From IMG/VR virus record IMGVR_UViG_3300017971_000190, positions 62,001 to 126,000 of that record: DNA of 64,000 nucleotides; one strand, given 5' to 3'. Shown here one piece after another: positions 3,103 to 55,636 of the stretch (position 1 is the first letter of the stretch; each line of letters starts with the position of its first letter). Below the pieces are notes generated by a model. That model saw nothing but the letters and a program-made list of their open reading frames with translations. It did not search any database and was not told the origin of the DNA. Both the position numbers and the translations under genes were made by a program.

Positions 3103-3443
3103 TTTCTTCTACCACTACTAAAATTTGGCGACCGAAAACAGAAGGTGAAGTCTGTTGCTGTACCAATTTTCAATGGGGCAGTAATTGTCCCTCTTGTTTT
3201 GGTACTGGTTTTGCAGGTGGTTATGATTGTGTAGGAGTAGCAATACTTGAGGAAAGTTTCAGTTCTTATTACATTAGAGCGTTGTTCCAAATTAAAGTTG
3301 CAGATTTATTTGCTTACAATAATAGTGTTCATCAGGTGAGAACGGTACGACAGATGATGTTTTCAGACAGCTTTGAGATAAAGACAGAAAATCTTAATCT
3401 AATTTTCTACCAAATAGGCAAGTTAGTTGACTTGTTAAAATAA
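3099..3443 (+). CDS. Cys-rich neck/head-tail-connector-like paralog
   Basis: Motif WRPKTEGEVCCC...CPSCFGTGFAGGY, shared with 5207..5782 and the C-terminus of 18024..18923. Confidence 0.45.
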   Translation: MISSTTTKIWRPKTEGEVCCCTNFQWGSNCPSCFGTGFAGGYDCVGVAILEESFSSYYIRALFQIKVADLFAYNNSVHQVRTVRQMMFSDSFEIKTENLNLIFYQIGKLVDLLK

Positions 3444-3453
3444 GGAGACCACT

Positions 3454-3762
3454 GTGGACTCAATTAAAGACAAACCAAAACCAGGTCAAAAATGTAGGTA
3501 TTGTGCTGGAAAGGGAAAGTACAACAGTGAAGAGAAGTGCTACTGGTGTGAAGGTAGTGGTATAGAAAAAGTAATTTCAAATGATCTAAAACAGCACATT
3601 AAAAGGTTAAGAGTAGAGTACGATATTTTAACCACCTCAATTCATGAAATTTTTGACAAAAATGCAGAGGCTCTTAGTCTCACCCACCCTCGTTTGAGAG
3701 ACATGATCAAAGCTCGAAAACTGGTCCTGGAAACCATTATCCTTCTAAAGGAGAATCAGTAA
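3454..3762 (+). CDS. zinc-finger protein (CxxCxGxG repeats)
   Basis: CRYCAGKG and CYWCEGSG resemble DnaJ-type CxxCxGxG repeats; GGAG RBS before the GTG start. Confidence 0.6.
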   Translation: MDSIKDKPKPGQKCRYCAGKGKYNSEEKCYWCEGSGIEKVISNDLKQHIKRLRVEYDILTTSIHEIFDKNAEALSLTHPRLRDMIKARKLVLETIILLKENQ

Positions 3763-4479
3763 ATGCAAATAGAAACAGATTCCGAACTACTTAGAGCGGT
3801 AGTAGAAGGAAACAAAAGTGCTCAGCAACTCTTTGTTGAAGAGCTGTTTGCTGAAATAAAAAGCAACTTTGAAACCATGTTTTTGCCTTTTAAATGTATG
3901 AAGGCAGAAACTAAACCAACTCAAGATTGTCGATTGGCTGGTAAGGTTGATTTAATTGTAGATCCAATTACACAGTTTTCAGTGGTGGAAGATCTACCAA
4001 GTCAAGTAGAAATGCTTTTTAACGAACTGCTTGGTTCACTTCTGACTGCTTTTGAACCGGCAGTAAAGGGTTTGCTCACGGTTTGGAAAATTCCAGATAA
4101 TTTTATACTTACACCAGAAATACTCAAAAGCACTTTAAGTAATTATTCTTTTACACCTACGCATCTTTGGTGTGGATCTACTATGGTTAATTTTTTTATG
4201 TCTAGTAAGAGTTGGTATAAATTCTATGAGCCTACTACCACGTTAGAACAAGCTTCAGAGGGTCGCTTAGGTTTGCTTCGCGACATTGTAGAAAATCCTT
4301 TAGAACTATATACTGATTTGTTTCGTTATGATACATTAAGAACTTTAGATCCTGACGAGCTGGTAATTGTTTCTTCCTTCCAGCCTAAAAAAGTGTGGGT
4401 AGAGTGGAGTGACATAAAAAGACAAAAGGATGGCAGTTTTACAATTACCGCAACTCAATATGTAGGAGAGGTAGCTTAA
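3763..4479 (+). CDS. degenerate major-capsid-like protein (putative)
   Basis: C-terminal EPTTTLEQASEGRLGLLRDI...LYTDLFRYDTLRTLDPDELVIV resembles a large-phage capsid motif (DPVTQRELL..G..G.L.G..I.TD.FR....VL..GE..VV) recalled from memory. Confidence 0.45.
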   Translation: MQIETDSELLRAVVEGNKSAQQLFVEELFAEIKSNFETMFLPFKCMKAETKPTQDCRLAGKVDLIVDPITQFSVVEDLPSQVEMLFNELLGSLLTAFEPAVKGLLTVWKIPDNFILTPEILKSTLSNYSFTPTHLWCGSTMVNFFMSSKSWYKFYEPTTTLEQASEGRLGLLRDIVENPLELYTDLFRYDTLRTLDPDELVIVSSFQPKKVWVEWSDIKRQKDGSFTITATQYVGEVA

Positions 4480-4480
4480 A

Positions 4481-5244
4481 ATGGTTGAAGAAAAACAACA
4501 ACTAGTACCCATAAAATTGAAAGAAGAAAATTGCCCTCCGTTTTTGCTTGAGCTTTTAAAAATGGCTGAAGATAGTAGAGAAGAATATCCTGAAGAGGCA
4601 GGAAATGATCTCATTATTTTAGGAAGTGAAGCTATTGAAAAGCTTGGTAATTCCCTCTATGAAGTGGGTGTTGTTTTTCAGCTCAAGTTTAAAGGTAAAC
4701 CCTCGTTTAGAGTTGCTACCGTAGGCTAAAAATTTTTAGCTTGACACTACTAGCACCCTGTGATAAGGTGGGTTGTTACGCTAAGGATTAAGTGTGTGCC
4801 AGAAAATTTAAACTACAGTAAGTATGCTGGTTTTAAGATTCCTAATCACTGGCCACAGGTTTGTCCTTACTGTGGGTCTAAAAAATTGTGGCATGATTTT
4901 TCAATACCAGGTAGAGTTTTACAAAAGGCATTTTGCGTTGATTGTGAAAAAAGTTTTATTCCTCACCCCAGTATCAGATTTTGGAGACGATCATGAAAAA
5001 GCGACTACTTAAAAAGAGAAGGAAACGTGACCAAGCTCTCATGGCTGTTATCTTTGCTGATGCTGCAGCAGAATACATTCTCACTGGTTTTCCAAGTCAC
5101 CGTCCGAGCTACACCCCCCTCACACCAAAATCTACAAAAAGAGCTGTAAGAAAAACCATTAAAAAGATTAAGTTTCCAAAGAAGTACAAGTGGTTTGGTA
5201 CCATAAGTGGTCCCCTGGAAGAAAGAAGGTGCAACCGTGAGTAA
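4481..5244 (+). other. hypothetical CDSs 4481..4729, 4760..4996 (zinc ribbon, start uncertain) and 4981..5244
   Basis: Co-directional ORFs; CPYC...CVDC in 4760..4996. Confidence 0.55.
4741..4769 (+). promoter_or_regulatory. sigma70-type promoter
   Basis: TTGACA (4741-4746), 17-nt spacer, TAAGGT (4764-4769), in an intergenic gap. Confidence 0.7.
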
Positions 5245-5782
5245 GAAGAAAAATAATTTAATGGAACTCCCTAAGCAGGTACGCCAGAAGACAGTAGAGG
5301 AAGTTTTTATAGAAAAGGCCACAATCATTGTTTTTAAACCCCCTCTGACCGGTGCTGAGTGTGCTTGTCATGAAAAAATTATGGAACCAGCTGCCATTTG
5401 CCGAGAGTGTTACGGCACTGGTATTTTAGGAGGGTTTGATCTCCGAAAAGAAGTGATACCAATTGAAGAAGCTGCCTATGAAGAAATTGAGAAAGTAATT
5501 ACAGTTTTGGATACCACTAAAACAGACCACGCTTTTGCTTCTATGGATGATTGGGTTCTTCTCACTTTTGAGTGCCCTCTTCATTCGCATATTTATAGTG
5601 GATGTATTTTTGAGCTAAACAACAGATTTTGGAAAGTAACTAATGTAGAAGAAGAGTGTGAGGAAGACGCAGAAACAGGTGTTGGAAGACCTTATTGGGA
5701 AGTGCAGGCTCGCAAACTTCATGAATACGAACCAGCTTACATTTTTCTGGATGATAAACGTTGGAAAGGAGAAGAAAAGTGA
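5207..5782 (+). CDS. Cys-rich neck/head-closure-like paralog
   Basis: FKPPLTGAECAC...CRECYGTGILGGF followed by a beta-rich part (RFWKVTNV); likely start is GTG 5238. Confidence 0.5.
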   Translation: MVPWKKEGATVSKKKNNLMELPKQVRQKTVEEVFIEKATIIVFKPPLTGAECACHEKIMEPAAICRECYGTGILGGFDLRKEVIPIEEAAYEEIEKVITVLDTTKTDHAFASMDDWVLLTFECPLHSHIYSGCIFELNNRFWKVTNVEEECEEDAETGVGRPYWEVQARKLHEYEPAYIFLDDKRWKGEEK

Positions 5783-6804
5783 CAACCATTAAAGTAGGAA
5801 AATACAATGTAGATGTGGCCAACTTTAATTGTAATAGTGAGTTAGAGTGTTTTCAACTTGGTTTTGATAAAGGAACATTTGTACAAGGTCGTGGCTATGT
5901 AAAATACCACAAGAAAGAAAAACCGGTGTGCCAGACTCGGCACATTCACGGTTGCCCTCGTGTTGGTGTTTGTCTCGATTGCAGAAGTGTAATTAGTCCC
6001 AGTACAGCTTTAGCTGGAATTTGTTCTTGGTGTAGAGGTACAAATATTCAGTTAGACGAAAAGGATGCTACTAGTAATGATACCATTAAATGAATATGGT
6101 TATAAAAAAGGAATACTTTACGCTGACTGGGGCTGTCCTACTTGTCGTAAAGTTGTCTACCAAAATACTACTGAAGACGCTTTTAGTAAAGAGCGTATCT
6201 GTCACAGTTGTCAAAAAGCGAATAAAGAAGCCGAAAGACGATCTAAACATCTTTGGGAATTAGCCCAAACTGAACGTCCTCCCATTAGGTACAAAAACGG
6301 TATTTATGGAATTAGAGATGATCTATTTTCTTACTTGATTGGAATGTCTACTCCAGTTATAGATAGAAACTTACAAAGGCTTTACGCAAAGTCAGATCTT
6401 CAAATTCCTCAAAGGATTATCCCTACGCATCATAAAGAGTTTTAAAAATGAAACGGTTAACCAGAAAAATAGTTCATGAAGAATTGCTCCATTTTAACTT
6501 ATTTACTGTAACTCCGACTATTAGAGGATTTGATTTAGGCTATGGGCAAGACGGGTTTACAAGACTTCTAACAGGTGGTGGAATAGCTGGTAATGGTTAC
6601 AAGTGGTGGCTGTGCACTATTGGTGGAGTAACGCTTGCTGGCCCGCTTGTAACCAAAAAGCAGCTACAACGCTGTTTAAGGGAACACTTAGCTGGTTATT
6701 GTAATCGACCACAAGATCAATCTGGTTGGAGAACGTATGCCAGACTAAATAAAAATAAAAACGGAGAACATTACATTTGGGTGCAAAGCAGGATACCACA
6801 ATGA
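5761..6804 (+). other. hypothetical CDSs 5761..6093, 6065..6445 and 6448..6804
   Basis: Overlapping co-directional ORFs; the first two carry CxxC pairs. Confidence 0.6.
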
Positions 6805-7715
6805 CAACTAGCAGAGTTTTAAAATTAGCCAGACAAAAGTTAATCACTCCCCCACCATTCGTAGCCGGATCTATTCAGTACGAAGTAATTATGGGAAGTG
6901 AAGCATATGGAGTCTCTTCTGGAGATAGCGATAGAGACGTATACGGTTTTTGTGTCCCACCAAAGTCTATAGTATTTCCTCACACAGTTGGAGATATTCT
7001 AGGATTTGGACGACAGAAAAAACGATTTGAACAATATCAGCAACATCATGTTTATGACAAAGATGCTTTAGGTGGTAAAGGCGTTGAATATGATTTTTCT
7101 ATTTATAATATTGTAAAATATTTTAGTCTTTGTATGGAAAACAATCCGAATATGATCGACTCTCTTTTCGTTCCACAACGTTGTATTCTTTATATTACTA
7201 AAATTGGTCAAATGGTTAGAGAGAAAAGACAGTTGTTTCTTCATAAAGGTGCTTGGTTCAAATTTAAAGGTTATAGTTACAGCCAAATCAAAAAGATGAA
7301 AATTAAGAATCCGGAACCAGGAAGTAAAAGATATGAGAATATTAAAAAATTTGGTTTCGATGTAAAATTTGCTTATCATGTGGTACGTCTTCTTAATGAA
7401 GTTGAGGAGATTTTAGTAGAACAACATCTTACATTGGATAGAAATAGAGAACAATTAAAAGCAATTCGACGTGGAGAGTGGACTTTAGAACAAGTTGAAG
7501 ATTATTTCAATAAAAAAGAAGCAGAGCTTGAAACTGCTTATACTGAAAGTAAATTACAACACAGTCCAAATGAAGAAGTTATTAAAAATTTACTTCTCTC
7601 TTGTTTAGAAGAGTACTATGGTAATTTAGAAAACTGTGTTGAAATTCCCAATGCTGAGAAAGAGGCATTAAGAGAGATTGATAGAACTCTTGAAAAAGTA
7701 AGACACTGCTTATAG
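6801..7715 (+). CDS. DNA polymerase beta superfamily nucleotidyltransferase (RlaP/YcgL-like)
   Basis: GSEAYG...DSDRD signature (hG[GS]x9-13Dh[DE]), NNPN.ID.LF and helical C-terminus FDVKFAYHVVRLL; ATG 6801 overlaps the upstream stop. Confidence 0.85.
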   Translation: MTTSRVLKLARQKLITPPPFVAGSIQYEVIMGSEAYGVSSGDSDRDVYGFCVPPKSIVFPHTVGDILGFGRQKKRFEQYQQHHVYDKDALGGKGVEYDFSIYNIVKYFSLCMENNPNMIDSLFVPQRCILYITKIGQMVREKRQLFLHKGAWFKFKGYSYSQIKKMKIKNPEPGSKRYENIKKFGFDVKFAYHVVRLLNEVEEILVEQHLTLDRNREQLKAIRRGEWTLEQVEDYFNKKEAELETAYTESKLQHSPNEEVIKNLLLSCLEEYYGNLENCVEIPNAEKEALREIDRTLEKVRHCL

Positions 7716-50606: not shown

Positions 50607-50635
50607 TTGACAAATGCGCTGTCGGCAGGTAGACT
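50607..50635 (+). promoter_or_regulatory. sigma70-type promoter overlapping an inverted repeat
   Basis: TTGACA (50607-50612), 17 nt, TAGACT (50630-50635). Confidence 0.6.
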
Positions 50636-50677
50636 TCTTATTGTCTTACGGTAGTTTGTCTACCTGCCGACGAGCGC
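50616..50677. repeat. long inverted repeat (14 bp perfect plus 5 bp beyond a bulge)
   Basis: GTCGGCAGGTAGAC (50621-50634) and GTCTACCTGCCGAC (50658-50671), flanked by GCGCT/AGCGC. Confidence 0.9.
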
Positions 50678-50697
50678 TACAACAGGGTGCTCACCAC

Positions 50698-50739
50698 GGG
50701 CCATCGAGGATGCCGGTAACACTCTCGATGGCCCTTTTT
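50698..50739 (+). terminator. intrinsic terminator-like hairpin
   Basis: GGGCCATCGAG/CTCGATGGCCC 11-bp stem followed by TTTTT. Confidence 0.8.
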
Positions 50740-50768
50740 ATATCTCCACTTTGTAAAACCTCACTATC

Positions 50769-52553: not shown

Positions 52554-53591
52554 ATGACCGAAACCAACGAAATTCCTACCGACAACAAGAAGATCAAGCA
52601 CAGCCACTACAGCCTGTACCCTGAGGCTTTTCGTCCGATGATGGTACCCATTCAGGAGGAGGAGGATGCCACCGTTCGGATGAATATCCGAAACGAGTTC
52701 AGTGAAGATGAGGAGGACTGGGAGGATTTCAAGAATTCCATCAAAGAGTTTGGGATTCTTCAGCCTCTCTGTGTGGCTCCCAACCCCGACAAAACCAACG
52801 GTGTCAAGTATCTGATCATTTTCGGTGAGCGGCGTTGGCGCGCAGCTCGGGAGCTGACCGAAGAGGGGCATCCTGTTCGTGTTCCTTACGTCATCGATAC
52901 CCCTGCCAAGGACGCCGATGAGGAGGAGACGAAGCTGCGTCAGTTCAAGCTCATGGCGTTGGAGAATATCCAGCGTAAGGACTTGACTCACATGGAAAAG
53001 GCTCGTCTCATTTCCACTCTCGAAGACAATGGAATGTCCGTCGAGAAAATCTCGGACATGCTCAACAAGAGTCTGCCGTGGGTCTACAACTACCGCACGC
53101 TCGCGAAAGACGCCAACGAAGAGGTGCAGCAGAAGCTGGCGGAAGGTCGGATCACACAGCAAGCAGCGCTGGACATCGTAAGAAATCATGATCGCGAGTC
53201 TCAGGCAGCCGCGCTGAAGACCGTTCTTTCTCAGGCCAAGTCTCGGGCTGCTACGACGCGAGCTGCCCAGGGCATCAGCGGAAAGAAGATGAACAGCACG
53301 CCTCCGAAGAAATACGTCCAGGCTGTGGTGGACACCCTGCGTGAGGCGGAAGACCTGGAAGGCGTCATGAGTCTGGACGACGCACAGATCCTGCTCGTCA
53401 CCGTGATGCAGTGGGTGCAGGGGAAGAAGGCCGACGTGACGCTGAAGAAGCAGCTCAACGCAGCTTTCGACGGTCAGCTCAACACCCGTGACATGTTCGA
53501 CAACCGGCCGCGTGTGAAGAAGGAGAAGGTGTCAAGCAAGCTAGAGGAGAGCGACAAGCAGACGGAGGAGAACACTTCCGACAGCGAGTAA
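52554..53591 (+). CDS. parB: ParB/RepB/Spo0J family protein
   Basis: SIKEFGILQPL, YLIIFGERRWRAA (CTP-binding box), ENIQRKDL..MEKA and a following HTH (SVEKISDMLNKSLPWVYN). Confidence 0.9.
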   Translation: MTETNEIPTDNKKIKHSHYSLYPEAFRPMMVPIQEEEDATVRMNIRNEFSEDEEDWEDFKNSIKEFGILQPLCVAPNPDKTNGVKYLIIFGERRWRAARELTEEGHPVRVPYVIDTPAKDADEEETKLRQFKLMALENIQRKDLTHMEKARLISTLEDNGMSVEKISDMLNKSLPWVYNYRTLAKDANEEVQQKLAEGRITQQAALDIVRNHDRESQAAALKTVLSQAKSRAATTRAAQGISGKKMNSTPPKKYVQAVVDTLREAEDLEGVMSLDDAQILLVTVMQWVQGKKADVTLKKQLNAAFDGQLNTRDMFDNRPRVKKEKVSSKLEESDKQTEENTSDSE

Positions 53592-53603
53592 TTAATTTCA
53601 CTC

Positions 53604-53813
53604 TACCCGTTGCGTGCTAGGGACGTAGGTTCAAACCAACAACGGGTAACGAGACCAATTAGCAATTGGTCTAGTGAGGACGAGACCTCATGATGAGAAG
53701 CCGAGTAGCTCTCGGTAAAAAACGGGAGTAGTTACGACCTAACGTACCGTGCCGTGAGACACGTGGAAATAAGCTGGAGATTAACAATCGAAGAAAGCGG
53801 ATTTCCAATCTCA
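53604..53813 (+). ncRNA. candidate structured non-coding RNA (unassigned family)
   Basis: Consecutive stems TACCCGTTG/CAACGGGTA, AGACCAATT/AATTGGTCT, TGAGG/CCTCA, CCGAG/CTCGG, GTTA/TAAC, CGTG/CACG and GAGATT/AATCTC in a GC-rich gap with no ORF. Confidence 0.6.
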
Positions 53814-53839
53814 CATTTTTAATTTGGAGAAAAAGTCAA

Positions 53840-54197
53840 ATGCCAAAAAAAGCAACTTATTATTGTATTCGTTGTCTTCTGAAGGGAAGAGAAACTTTTT
53901 GGTCACCAGAAGACGACTTCCCTGATCAGTGTCCTCATTGTAAAATGCATACTTGGAGAACAGACTACGCAGGAGTTATTGAGTACATCAAAAACATGAG
54001 AACAGAGGCAGATGCAATTGAAGAGACGTTCAACAAAATCACAGGAAAAGGTAGAAGAACCTAATCAATCAGGACTGTATTGTCCAAAGCACGGATTTAT
54101 TCCAGAAGGGAAAATTACAACTGTAAAAACTTGTGGAATCTGCATGGAAGAACGTAGTTGTTCAGCAAACGACGCAACAATTTTGCAACGCAGATAA
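53840..54197 (+). other. two small zinc-ribbon CDSs (53840..54064, 54012..54197)
   Basis: CIRC...CPHC and CPKH...CGIC; GGAGA RBS. Confidence 0.6.
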
Positions 54198-54212: not shown

Positions 54213-54404
54213 ATGTACAAGTGCGACAAGTGTGGAAACAGTACCGGAGCTGGCCAGGAGCTGATTTGAAGGGTAGTGCAAACCCGCTACAAGGAGTACC
54301 CGGAGCGCAAGGACAAGCGAGGGAACATCATCGATGAGGGTGGTGATGGGCGAGAAATCGTCAAGGAGCTGAAGCTCTGCCCCTCATGTGCTACCGACGC
54401 TTAG
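54213..54404 (+). pseudogene. zinc-ribbon gene interrupted by an in-frame TGA (pseudogene or readthrough)
   Basis: AAGGAG RBS; MYKCDKCG...ELI*RVVQTR...KELKLCPSCATDA, with TGA at 54267-54269 between the two CxxC halves. Confidence 0.75.
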
Positions 54405-54439
54405 ACCTTCTTTTCTCTCCTTCCACTTTGTAAAAACTG

Positions 54440-54468
54440 TTGACACTGCTCCACATTAGTGGTAGCAT
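54440..54468 (+). promoter_or_regulatory. sigma70-type promoter with extended -10
   Basis: TTGACA, 17 nt ending TGG, TAGCAT; CCACAT/ATGTGG inverted repeat straddles the -10. Confidence 0.75.
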
Positions 54469-54517: not shown

Positions 54518-55636
54518 ATGGACAAGGCAACTTATGAGAAAATGCTGGCTAGAATTTCTGACCGTACTCAGGATGTAAGAGCTACAGCAGGAGAGCTACT
54601 TAATTGTTGGGGTTTCGATTTGGAAGCCCGCCGTCCTGGGGTGGCTTACGTTACCGAAGCTGGTACTCAAGTCACCAATCTCGACATGGCTTGCATTCTC
54701 TCCAAGTTGGTGGAGTGGGGAAGTGTTATTGACCTTAGCACCTACAAGGCTCTTGGTCCTGCTACCAAGCGAGAAGGGGAAATCGTTACCAGCAAAGACC
54801 ACAGACACGGAAAAATTCTTAGTCTCATTGCCCATAGTGAGGTTTTTAACTTTTCTATCCGAATTATGGATATGAATGTGATGACAGCTAAGGATACAGG
54901 AAATTACCGTAATTTCCTCCTCATGCATGATCGCCAGTGGCATGAGGGTTTCCGAAGCCTCACCTTCATTCCTACCGAGATGGAAAAAGAGCTGCTGGCA
55001 AAGATTCCCAGCAACGGTAACACTACCGTTTTCGAGCATTTCATCAGTCCCAATCGTTGGCCTAGCCTTTACGGTCGCTACTACATTCTGGCCAAGGCTC
55101 TTATTCCTCGTCTAAAGGACGAAATTAAATTCCTGAAGAGTGAAATCAACCGACTAATTAAAGCTCTTTCCATTTCTACCGAACCGTGGCCCAAGACAAC
55201 TAGAGGTGCGAGTGCTCCGAAAAAGGTTTGGAAATTTGAAGCTGAGGTAGCCAATGTGAAGGAGCTTCATGGAGACTATACTACTTTCCCAACTACCCAA
55301 GATGGATATGATGAAGCAAAAAACCTAAACAGCCGGCTCAATGGGTTTAAAGAGCAGCTCTCTTTCCAGATTTGCGCTACTGAGTTCTCTTTCTTTGAAA
55401 AAGTGCTCGCTAAGTGCAACATGAGCGATGATGACTTCATCGCGTGGATTGGAGATGGTAGCAATAGCAACTTCATTCCCAAGGCTGCTTGGGTAAATGA
55501 TAAAGAGTGGATGAGCTGGAGGAAAAGCAATAGAAGTAAGCCTTGGATGAGCATGAACATCGATCCTGATAACGGTCTAGCTCTTCGCTGGAAGCCGGGT
55601 AAGAAGACCATTCAGGTAGCTCCTGACCAGGCTTAA
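54518..55636 (+). CDS. hypothetical protein (probable early gene)
   Basis: Long ORF behind a strong promoter and AAGGA RBS; more C/G-ending codons than its neighbours. Confidence 0.75.
   Translation: MDKATYEKMLARISDRTQDVRATAGELLNCWGFDLEARRPGVAYVTEAGTQVTNLDMACILSKLVEWGSVIDLSTYKALGPATKREGEIVTSKDHRHGKILSLIAHSEVFNFSIRIMDMNVMTAKDTGNYRNFLLMHDRQWHEGFRSLTFIPTEMEKELLAKIPSNGNTTVFEHFISPNRWPSLYGRYYILAKALIPRLKDEIKFLKSEINRLIKALSISTEPWPKTTRGASAPKKVWKFEAEVANVKELHGDYTTFPTTQDGYDEAKNLNSRLNGFKEQLSFQICATEFSFFEKVLAKCNMSDDDFIAWIGDGSNSNFIPKAAWVNDKEWMSWRKSNRSKPWMSMNIDPDNGLALRWKPGKKTIQVAPDQA

What the first reader, a model, noticed from the sequence alone, without database searches (positions are those of the whole stretch)
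53604..53813. Candidate novel ~210-nt structured RNA downstream of parB
Nearly the whole gap pairs into seven consecutive stems, including two perfect 9-bp helices (53604-53612 with 53640-53648; AGACCAATT/AATTGGTCT). The first encloses a T-loop-like GGTTCAAACC. ACGAGACC occurs twice (53649, 53680) and GTGAGAC once, with GAGA-type loops of the GNRA-like class used for tertiary contacts. An A-rich linker lies mid-way and a U-tract at the end. I cannot match it to tRNA, tmRNA, RNase P, SRP, intron or known ribozyme cores.
Basis: partly seen in the sequence, partly recalled or inferred. Interest (0 to 1): 0.75.

Follow-up and report, generated by a model that had tools for sequence, protein, structure and literature searches.

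The report
New structured RNA after phage parB
The 250-base gap after the parB gene of an uncultivated giant phage encodes a real, evolutionarily conserved, roughly 220-nt multi-hairpin RNA that matches no known RNA family, is known from only four metagenomic sequences, and has no known function.

Summary
I recovered three homologues from related phage contigs (L008, L015, L014), always directly after the parB stop codon. Across the four sequences, 61 proposed pairs are 90-96% paired, against 28-42% when partners are slid by 1-3 columns. 23 pairs show compensatory double changes. G.U pairs outnumber A.C mismatches 15 to 4, which favours the + (gene) strand. Rfam 15 and ARAGORN find nothing. 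The palindromes are not conserved as sequence, and more distant relatives that keep parB lack the element, so it is not a ParB DNA site. A lead to TIGR-Tas arrays (which occur with ParB-like genes) failed its tests. The GNRA claim is not supported and the T-loop claim is only weakly supported. Transcription could not be tested because no RNA runs hold it. My best reading is a non-coding RNA domain made as the 3' end of the parB transcript, ending at its own terminator-like hairpin, and acting through conserved loops (UAG, ACGA, AYCUAA). A cis-acting attenuator is the main rival. This is a new orphan RNA family of moderate interest.

The parts
52554..53591 (+). parB gene: 345 aa, ParB_N with a GERRWRAA motif, HTH_ParB, and a C-terminal domain. 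It is GC-rich (55%, GC3 72%) in a 38% GC genome.
   Evidence: Pfam and PHROGs. Homologues P0002 and P0003 are 75-76% identical. Full-length homologues lie in L012 and L016.
53604..53648 (+). Domain 1, a three-way junction. P1 pairs 53604-53612 with 53640-53648. P1a pairs 53613-53615 with 53623-53625 and has the loop GCUAGGG. P1b pairs 53628-53629 with 53636-53637 and has the conserved loop NUCAAA.
   Evidence: In P1, 7 of 9 pairs show compensatory changes. P1a varies UA<->CG. The inner P1b pair is GC, CG, CG and AU in the four sequences.
53652..53672 (+). H2: a perfect 9-bp hairpin, AGACCAATT-AGC-AATTGGTCT. The loop region UUAGC is conserved.
   Evidence: Pair 60/76 is AU, UA and CG, and pair 64/72 is AU -> UG. 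As DNA the palindrome is imperfect in L014 and poor in L015. It is unique in the 221-kb record.
53674..53691 (+). H3: GUGAGG-ACGAGA-CCUCAU. The hexaloop begins with a conserved ACGA.
   Evidence: There are two compensatory pairs: GC -> AU in L015 and AU -> GC in L014. All cells are paired.
53692..53699 (+). Purine-rich linker. Together with the last base of H3 it reads AUGAUGAGAA, a box-C-like string in 3 of 4 sequences.
   Evidence: L015 has AUGAAAGAAA, and there is no conserved CUGA partner.
53700..53716 (+). H4: GCCGAG-UAGCU-CUCGGU.
   Evidence: There are two compensatory pairs and two GC -> GU changes. 91.7% of cells are paired.
53717..53723 (+). Conserved A-rich linker, AAAAAAC.
   Evidence: AAAAAC is invariant in all four sequences.
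53722..53750 (+). H5: outer stem ACGG/CCGU around an inner hairpin whose closing CG and GC pairs and hexaloop AYCUAA are invariant. GGAGUAG on the 5' side is conserved.
   Evidence: There is one compensatory pair in each of the outer and inner stems. The register of the middle part is ambiguous.
53754..53814 (+). H6: a long terminal hairpin. Basal stem GUGAGA/UCUCAC, middle stem UGGAAAU/AUUUCCA, then GCU/AGC, then apical GAUU-AAC-AAUC.
   Evidence: The basal stem has 2 compensatory pairs and 95.8% of cells paired. The apical stem changes GAUU/AAUC -> GGUU/AACC. In L014 the interior is rebuilt as a branched structure.
53815..53825 (+). AUUUUUAAUUU tract directly after H6. The hairpin plus this tract resembles a terminator.
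   Evidence: ACAUUUUU is invariant in all four sequences. The simple terminator scan does not call it because the hairpin is too long. The same GUGAGG...CCUCAC-AUUUUUAAU layout recurs at genome 2192-2305.
53826..54064 (+). GGAG ribosome-binding site (53826-53829) and the 74-aa CxxC...CxxC zinc-ribbon gene (53840-54064).
   Evidence: Homologues follow the RNA in L008 and L015, but in L014 an unrelated 77-aa gene takes this place.

Best explanation
The gap encodes a structured non-coding RNA of about 220 nt on the + strand, window:53604-53825. It belongs to a previously uncatalogued family found so far only in a narrow clade of uncultivated giant phages.

Shown:
- The fold: a three-way-junction domain, four hairpins and a long terminal hairpin.
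- Its conservation through compensatory changes.
- Its fixed position directly after the parB stop codon.
- Its absence from more distant relatives that keep parB.
- Its single copy in the genome.

Inferred:
- It is transcribed as the 3' end of the parB message, because no promoter-like site lies between the stop codon and P1.
- Transcription ends, at least partly, at H6 plus the invariant ACAUUUUU tract.
- The resulting RNA domain works through its invariant unpaired segments. UAG recurs in loops and junctions, H3 carries ACGA, H5 carries AYCUAA, and the linker reads AAAAAC. These segments would bind a protein, or another RNA or loop, rather than base-pair along the RNA's length.

Whether it then acts in trans as a stable RNA or in cis on the parB operon is open. 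I put trans-acting or partner-binding at about 0.4 and cis-regulatory at about 0.3.
For: Fold and chance: z = -3.46, with 0 of 200 shuffles folding as well.

Homologues: L008, L015 and L014 each carry a 240-266 nt gap after a parB that is 75-76% identical.

Covariation, 5' half: 35 pairs, 95.7% of cells paired against 30-40% in slid controls, and 15 pairs with double changes that no shuffle out of 500 reached.

Covariation, 3' half, on an unfitted MAFFT alignment: 26 pairs, 90.4% paired against 28-42%, and 8 pairs with double changes.

Strand: G.U cells outnumber A.C cells 15 to 4.

Constraint: between the window and L008 the 127-nt core has 3 differences. Well-aligned flanking coding blocks differ at 13% of sites, and 22% at third positions, giving P = 1.7e-5.

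Not a known family: no Rfam 15 match and no tRNA or tmRNA call.

Not coding: the minus-strand ORF is not conserved as a protein, and small + strand ORFs differ in length and frame.

3' end: ACAUUUUU after the basal stem is invariant, and the same layout occurs elsewhere in the genome.

Tie to parB rather than to the downstream gene: L014 has an unrelated gene downstream.
Against: - There is no expression data. Only DNA runs hold the sequence.
- There are only four sequences from one narrow clade, so there is no statistical power in the R-scape sense. The 5'-half alignment was fitted to the model.
- The near-identity of the core between the window and L008 could reflect recent recombination rather than selection. 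In the more distant pairs the RNA is no more conserved than parB DNA (71-74% against 73-76%).
- H6 is atypically long for an intrinsic terminator and is not called by the simple scan.
- No partner is identified.
- The UAG recurrence is only a modest enrichment.
Confidence: 0.6

Rival explanations
1. Cis-acting leader or attenuator. A riboswitch-like or protein-dependent element whose 5' domains sense a ligand or protein and set termination at H6 and the U-tract. Alternatively it masks the downstream ribosome-binding site, gating read-through from parB into the small zinc-ribbon genes.
For: - It sits between co-directional genes with no promoter-like site in between.
- A structured domain is followed by a hairpin plus an invariant U-tract, then GGAG and ATG within 25 nt.
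- The RNA and the small genes are absent together in L012.
- A CUCU or CCUCU string just 5' of P1 can pair with the downstream Shine-Dalgarno sequence in all four sequences (and by eye).
Against: - The gene directly downstream is not conserved: L014 has an unrelated 77-aa gene.
- I found no conserved alternative (antiterminator) pairing. The H3 3' strand against the H6 5' strand fails in L014.
- The anti-SD pairing is only 4-5 bp and closes a loop of more than 220 nt.
- No Rfam riboswitch matches.
Confidence: 0.25
2. DNA-level element. The palindromes would be ParB loading sites (parS or centromere, as downstream of P1 parB or F sopB), operators, or an origin of replication.
For: - The position is immediately 3' of parB.
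- There is a perfect 9-3-9 palindrome.
- ParB has an HTH domain.
- The record holds no ParA, so this ParB may act as a regulator.
Against: - Pairing, not sequence, is conserved. H2 becomes AGTCCATTT/AAGTGGACT in L014 (T.G at the DNA level) and GCCC...GGGC in L015, while ParB stays about 75% identical.
- The hairpins all differ in sequence, with no repeated site. The palindrome is unique in 221 kb.
- G.U exceeds A.C.
- L012 and L016 keep parB without the element.
- The ParB-DNA complex job was not folded and gives no evidence either way.
Confidence: 0.05
3. tRNA-like module. Domain 1 would mimic the acceptor/T/D 'top half' of a tRNA. It would serve as an RNase P or RNase Z processing signal that releases the RNA from the parB message, or as a decoy for tRNA-directed enzymes.
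For: - The layout is a three-way junction: a 9-bp closing stem, a 3-bp arm with a GG-containing loop, and an arm with a conserved UCAAA loop.
- P1 plus P1b stack to about 11-12 bp, like acceptor plus T stems. This comparison is an inference.
- The phage does carry a tRNA cluster.
Against: - ARAGORN and Rfam tRNA and tmRNA models do not match.
- P1b has 2-3 bp and a 6-nt loop.
- The first loop base is A in 3 of 4 sequences where a T-loop has U54.
- There is no CCA or discriminator. L015 lacks the GG loop.
Confidence: 0.07
4. Guide-RNA locus of a TIGR-Tas-like or box C/D-like system. Such arrays are reported in operons with ParB-like genes, sometimes between tasParB and tasA (PMC12045711).
For: - A ParB-like gene and a conserved 372-aa partner gene flank the RNA.
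- AUGAUGA (box C) is present in 3 of 4 sequences.
- Variable but palindromic stems are also seen in 'stem-loop' arrays (PMC12045711, section 9).
Against: - There are no repeated units and no spacer-like hypervariable segments.
- There is no conserved CUGA box D.
- The 372-aa protein has a confident model (pLDDT 86) with no PDB match at E < 0.01, so no Nop, TasR or IS110 fold.
- There is no Pfam Nop hit in the protein family or in the 221-kb record.
Confidence: 0.02

Closest known systems
Orphan structured ncRNA motifs predicted by comparative genomics in phage and viral metagenomes (for example PMC10690425, PMC5737381)
   Same: It is an intergenic, multi-stem element supported by compensatory changes. 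It is found in uncultivated phage contigs and its function is unknown.
   Different: It matches none of the 4227 Rfam 15 families. I could not check the unpublished or unheld motif lists of PMC10690425 because no supplement is held. It is very rare, with four sequences known.
3'-UTR-derived or terminator-ending small RNAs of bacteria and phages
   Same: It lies at the 3' end of a coding gene on the same strand. It has no promoter of its own and ends in a hairpin plus U-tract.
   Different: It is about 220 nt with a junction domain and five further helices, which is far larger and more ornate than typical 3'-UTR sRNAs. There is no evidence of processing and no long seed-like complementarity in the genome.
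Riboswitch or attenuator leaders
   Same: A conserved structured domain is followed by a terminator-like hairpin, then the ribosome-binding site of the next gene.
   Different: There is no conserved alternative pairing. The downstream gene is not conserved. There is no family match.
Centromere/parS sites next to parB (P1 parS, F sopC, chromosomal parS)
   Same: The location is directly downstream of a parB gene and it contains palindromes.
   Different: The palindromes are all different, unique in the genome, and conserved as pairing rather than as sequence. The element is missing from relatives that keep parB.
TIGR arrays associated with tasParB-tasA operons (PMC12045711)
   Same: A non-coding RNA locus lies between a phage ParB-like gene and a conserved partner gene. 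A box-C-like AUGAUGA is present.
   Different: There are no tandem units, spacers or box D. The partner protein shows no Nop fold.
tRNA / T-loop motifs
   Same: There is a UUCAAA loop closed by covarying G-C pairs inside a junction closed by a 9-bp stem.
   Different: The loop is 6 nt on a 2-3 bp stem. There is no anticodon arm and no CCA end. ARAGORN and Rfam are negative.

Membership tests
Any Rfam 15 family | Covariance-model score at or above the gathering threshold | tested here: not met
   There are 0 matches in the whole window at gathering. At E <= 10 on 53400-54000 there are only three chance-level hits: snoRNA, miRNA and sR30 at 10-15 bits against cut-offs of 35-73.
tRNA / tmRNA | Cloverleaf or tRNA-like domain recognised by ARAGORN or Rfam RF00005/tmRNA models | tested here: not met
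   ARAGORN finds 0 genes in the window. The same tools find 8 and 7 tRNAs elsewhere in the genome, so the tools work on this phage.
T-loop motif | 7-nt UUCRANN loop on a 5-bp stem with U54-A58 geometry | tested here: inconclusive
   The loop is the 6-nt NUCAAA. Its first base is U in the window and A in the other three. The stem is 2-3 bp and its inner pair covaries GC/CG/AU. The geometry cannot be tested with these tools.
GNRA tetraloop hairpins | 4-nt GNRA loop closing a helix | tested here: not met
   The H3 loop is ACGAGA, ACGAAC or ACGACA. The alternative CGUG-AGA-CACG hairpin has a triloop. The only GNRA (GCAA) is in the rebuilt H6 apex of L014.
Hammerhead ribozyme | Conserved CUGANGA ... 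GAAA core around a three-way junction | tested here: not met
   AUGAUGAG is preceded by A rather than C. L015 has AUGAAAGA. H4 is followed by UAAAAAA rather than GAAA. There is no Rfam hammerhead hit at E <= 10.
Intrinsic terminator | G+C-rich hairpin immediately followed by a U-tract | tested here: inconclusive
   A 6-bp basal stem with covariation is followed 1 nt later by an invariant UUUUU. However, the hairpin encloses about 50 nt, is A+U-rich, and is not called by the consensus scan. Termination itself was not tested.
Riboswitch / attenuator | Mutually exclusive terminator and antiterminator pairings conserved across homologues | tested here: not met
   By-eye search of the four sequences. 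The only candidate, the H3 3' strand against the H6 5' strand, keeps 5-6 bp in three sequences but 4 of 6 in L014. This was not an exhaustive test.
Riboswitch / attenuator | Conserved association with a functional class of downstream genes | tested here: not met
   A zinc-ribbon gene follows in three sequences and an unrelated 77-aa gene in L014.
parS / ParB-binding centromere | Palindromic DNA site conserved in sequence with its ParB, usually in several copies | tested here: not met
   The site is unique in the 221-kb record. Its sequence changes while pairing is kept. It is absent next to the parB of L012 and L016.
parS / ParB-binding centromere | Direct binding by the cognate ParB | not testable with these tools
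   The complex-prediction job was not folded.
TIGR array / box C/D guide RNA | Tandem units with box C (RUGAUGA) and box D (CUGA) flanking variable spacers | tested here: not met
   There is one box-C-like string in 3 of 4 sequences, no conserved CUGA and no repeated unit.
TIGR array / box C/D guide RNA | Adjacent Nop-domain (Tas) protein | tested here: not met
   The 372-aa neighbour has no Pfam Nop hit. Its AF2 model has no PDB match at E < 0.01. PF01798 is absent from the record.
Conserved structured RNA (general) | Base pairs maintained by compensatory substitutions in homologues | tested here: met
   23 of 61 pairs show double changes. 90-96% of cells are paired against 28-42% in slid controls.
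Conserved structured RNA (general) | Transcription of the strand concerned | not testable with these tools
   No RNA run holds the sequence.

The most novel reading that the evidence does not exclude
The RNA is the founding member of a functionally new class. One possibility is a ligand-sensing or self-processing RNA. Another is an RNA cofactor that works with the orphan, ParA-less ParB CTPase and its conserved 372-aa partner of unknown fold, for example by loading, titrating or targeting the ParB clamp. That would be the first RNA partner of a ParB-family protein.
Probability: 0.08. Interest if true: 0.85.

Novelty: new member of a known kind. Interest (0 to 1): 0.45.

Why it matters
Giant phages carry many unexplained intergenic regions, and few of their non-coding RNAs have been described. 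This is a clean case. It is a 220-nt RNA whose helices are all kept by compensatory changes, whose loops are invariant, and which always sits at the end of an orphan parB gene.

If it binds a phage or host factor, it would add a new RNA player to giant-phage infection. If it senses a ligand, it would be a new regulatory RNA class. In either case it supplies a defined, testable molecule.

Against that, orphan RNA motifs are predicted in phage metagenomes by the thousands. This one is rare, its host is unknown, and no function can yet be assigned.

Tried and rejected
- **Known families.** Rfam at gathering and at E <= 10, and ARAGORN, gave nothing.
- **GenBank phages.** blastn gave no match. tblastn with ParB gave only distant ParBs.
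- **Pattern and protein scans for more homologues.**
  - The 21-nt palindrome and a 22-mer from the core gave none.
  - The twin ACGAGACC pattern gave L009 and L010, which lie in a GC-rich coding region and are chance hits.
  - A conserved-motif pattern gave L019, which lies inside a 420-aa ORF and has no R1 match, so it is also a chance hit.
  - ParB-based locus scans of IMG/VR and JGI metagenomes returned only my own contig or distant ParBs without a downstream gap.
- **Model R1.** It finds one copy in the 221-kb record and nothing in the other loci.
- **Targets within the genome.** No complementarity beyond 11-14 nt chance matches.
- **TIGR-Tas lead.** Rejected.
- **Coding potential.** Rejected.
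- **Sequencing runs.** Only DNA contigs of the source samples are available.
- **ParB with the H2 DNA.** The complex-prediction job was not folded and gives no evidence.
- **First gap-scan script.** It timed out and was rerun.

Full report
**Context.** The window is bases 62001-126000 of a 221,679-bp IMG/VR virus record. The record is AT-rich at 38% GC. The longest contig with the same ParB is 298 kb. The record carries a cluster of eight tRNA genes near its left end. All this indicates an uncultivated giant phage, from sediment and seawater metagenomes. The gene ending at 53591 is a genuine ParB, with ParB_N, HTH_ParB and ParB-like PHROGs at 1e-30. No ParA-like ATPase is present in the held record. 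The next gene, 53840-54064, encodes a 74-aa CxxC...CxxC protein.

**Observation.** The 248-nt gap folds at -72.1 kcal/mol on the + strand, with z = -3.46 and no shuffle out of 200 as good. The - strand gives -67.9 kcal/mol and z = -2.58. In a crude scan of all gaps of 120-330 nt in the genome, this gap ranks among the more structured ones but is not the top one. Rfam 15 gives no hit at gathering thresholds and only noise at E <= 10. ARAGORN finds nothing.

**Homologues.** ParB has only two close relatives among 5.8 billion proteins: P0002 at 76% and P0003 at 75% identity. The next best hits are at 34-37%. Their contigs show gaps of 240 and 266 nt after parB. The DNA came through on a second try, as L015 and L014. 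A fourth copy, L008, was reached through the 74-aa protein's only homologue. Three further assemblies of the same phage are identical and therefore uninformative.

**Structure and covariation.**
- Between the window and L008, P1 changes from TACCCGTTG/CAACGGGTA to TGCCTACCG/CGGTAGGTA. That is four double changes plus one A-U to G.U change.
- With all four sequences, RNAalifold finds 17 pairs with compensatory changes.
- For the 5' half (P1, P1a, P1b, H2, H3, H4) I built covariance model R1 and realigned the sequences. Of 35 pairs, 95.7% of cells are paired, against 30-40% when partners are slid by 1-3 columns. Fifteen pairs have changes on both sides, a count no shuffle out of 500 reached. This alignment was fitted to the model, which favours the structure, but the plain MAFFT alignments show the same changes.
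- For the 3' half (H5, H6) on a plain MAFFT alignment, 26 pairs are 90.4% paired against 28-42%. Eight pairs have double changes. An alternative register for H5 scores similarly.
- G.U cells outnumber A.C cells 15 to 4. This weakly favours the + strand, which is also the strand of the flanking genes.
- In L014 the interior of H6 is rebuilt as a branched structure. The basal stem (GUAAGG/CCUUAC) and the following ACAUUUUU are kept.

**Conservation pattern.**
- Between the window and L008, the 127-nt core 53649-53775 has three differences. Well-aligned flanking coding blocks differ at 13% of sites, and at 22% of third codon positions, giving P = 1.7e-5. Recent recombination could also explain this.
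- In the more distant pairs the RNA is about as diverged as parB DNA: 71-74% against 73-76% identity.
- The invariant unpaired segments are CGUAG, the NUCAAA loop, GGUAAC, UUAGC (H2 loop), CUAGU, GGACGA (H3), AAAAAC, GGAGUAG, CGAYCUAACG (H5), GGAG in H6, and ACAUUUUU.
- UAG recurs five times in loops or junctions of the 5' half of the window copy. Three of these are kept in all four sequences. This is a modest enrichment, and I read it only as a hint of a repeated recognition or loop-loop motif.

**Not coding.** A minus-strand ORF of 39-47 codons exists in all four sequences, but it is poorly conserved as protein. Identity to the window copy is 17-21 of 47 residues, with shifted frames and different ends, while the DNA is 71-74% identical. 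It also lacks a ribosome-binding site. The small + strand ORF starting at AUGAUG differs in length (9-22 codons) and in content.

**Not a ParB DNA site.**
- The palindromes all differ from each other.
- The 21-nt H2 palindrome is unique in 221 kb.
- H2's sequence changes while pairing is kept, including a U.G pair in L014.
- Distant but full-length ParB homologues lie directly next to the conserved 372-aa gene without any such gap. L012 is 32% identical at E = 5e-54, with a 33-nt spacer. L016 is 33% identical at E = 2e-29.
- The RNA therefore arose, or was inserted, only in the AT-rich subclade.

**Link to neighbours.** The RNA always follows parB. The gene after it does not stay the same: L014 has an unrelated 77-aa gene there. 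The RNA, the 74-aa gene and the 61-aa gene are AT-rich like the genome. In contrast parB, the 63-aa gene and the 372-aa gene are GC-rich like the relatives L012 and L016, which have 55-59% GC. This suggests a mosaic history.

**The TIGR-Tas lead.** A literature search turned up TIGR-Tas systems, whose arrays can lie between a ParB-like gene and tasA (PMC12045711). I tested this lead and it failed.
- The RNA has one box-C-like AUGAUGA in three of four copies. It has no conserved box D and no repeated units.
- The 372-aa protein family has no Pfam match.
- Its AlphaFold model is confident (pLDDT 86, pTM 0.88) but has no PDB fold match at E < 0.01.
- The Nop domain is absent from the record.

**3' end.** H6 plus AUUUUUAAUUU looks like a terminator, although the hairpin is long and A+U-rich and the simple scan does not call it. 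A second element with the same layout lies at genome 2192-2305, upstream of the tRNA cluster. It has a GUGAGG...CCUCAC basal stem around a branched insert, followed by AUUUUUAAU. This argues that the layout is a recurrent 3'-end signal in this phage. No sigma-70-like promoter lies between the parB stop codon and P1. A good one, conserved in L008, lies further on at 54440-54468.

**Verdict.**
- This is a real, conserved, + strand structured RNA of about 220 nt. It is new to Rfam and known from four metagenomic phage sequences.
- Mechanism, inferred: it is made as the 3' end of the parB transcript, ends at H6 and the U-tract, and acts through its invariant loops on an unknown partner.
- The main rival is a cis-acting attenuator.
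- Transcription, processing and binding remain untested.

Noticed in passing
window:50525-50768: This is the most structured gap in the record (-88.2 kcal/mol, z about -7). It holds a TTGACA at about 50606, a near-perfect 19-bp hairpin (50615-50677) and a classic G+C-rich terminator with TTTTTAT (50697-50741). It could be a separate small RNA gene of about 110-130 nt between a minus-strand gene and the HNH endonuclease gene.
   Followed up: partly
window:54213-54405: A small CxxC...CxxC gene, 62-63 aa in L008, L014 and L015, carries an in-frame TGA at 54267-54269 where the relatives encode Arg. The TGA is identical in three independent assemblies. Ordinary long ORFs and a TAA/TGA/TAG stop usage of 167/71/66 give no sign of a changed genetic code. 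It is probably a nonsense mutation or a split gene.
   Followed up: partly
window:52554-53591, 54213-54405 and 54518-55636: There is a GC island. parB (55% GC, GC3 72%), the 63-aa gene (55%) and the 372-aa gene (46%) stand out from the 38% GC genome. Homologous modules lie in GC-rich phage contigs (L012 at 55%, L016 at 59%). The RNA and the 74-aa and 61-aa genes between them have the host-genome composition. This suggests mosaic acquisition.
   Followed up: partly
window:52554-55636; L012:3032-5119; L016:4608-7104: The parB gene and the 372-aa gene form a conserved pair across phages of very different GC content. The record has no ParA. The 372-aa protein gives a confident AlphaFold model (pLDDT 86) with two long helices and beta-rich domains, and no PDB fold match.
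   Followed up: partly
window:50745-50761 and 54422-54438: The motif TCCACTTTGTAAAA(C/A)CT is repeated. The second copy sits just upstream of a strong sigma-70-like promoter (TTGACA-17-TAGCAT with TG, 54440-54468). Both the motif and the promoter are conserved in L008 (about 1283-1325).
   Followed up: partly
L021 (genome 1-12000): 3372-7648 and 2192-2305: There is a cluster of eight tRNA genes (Glu, Met, Leu, Ser, Pro, Gln, Val, Lys). Upstream of it lies a branched structure of about 105 nt, closed by GUGAGG/CCUCAC and followed by AUUUUUAAU. Its 3' architecture is the same as H6 of the RNA studied here. The first 3 kb of the record has few convincing ORFs.
   Followed up: partly
L014:1828-2061: In this relative the gene right after the RNA is an unrelated 77-aa gene instead of the zinc-ribbon gene. 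L008 has an extra 65-aa gene (868-1065) that the window lacks. The small genes in this stretch turn over quickly.
   Followed up: no
window:50769-51338: There is an HNH endonuclease gene (Pfam HNH, E = 3.6e-7) about 2.3 kb upstream of the RNA. It is conserved at the same place in L015's contig. No intron-like RNA was detected by Rfam.
   Followed up: no
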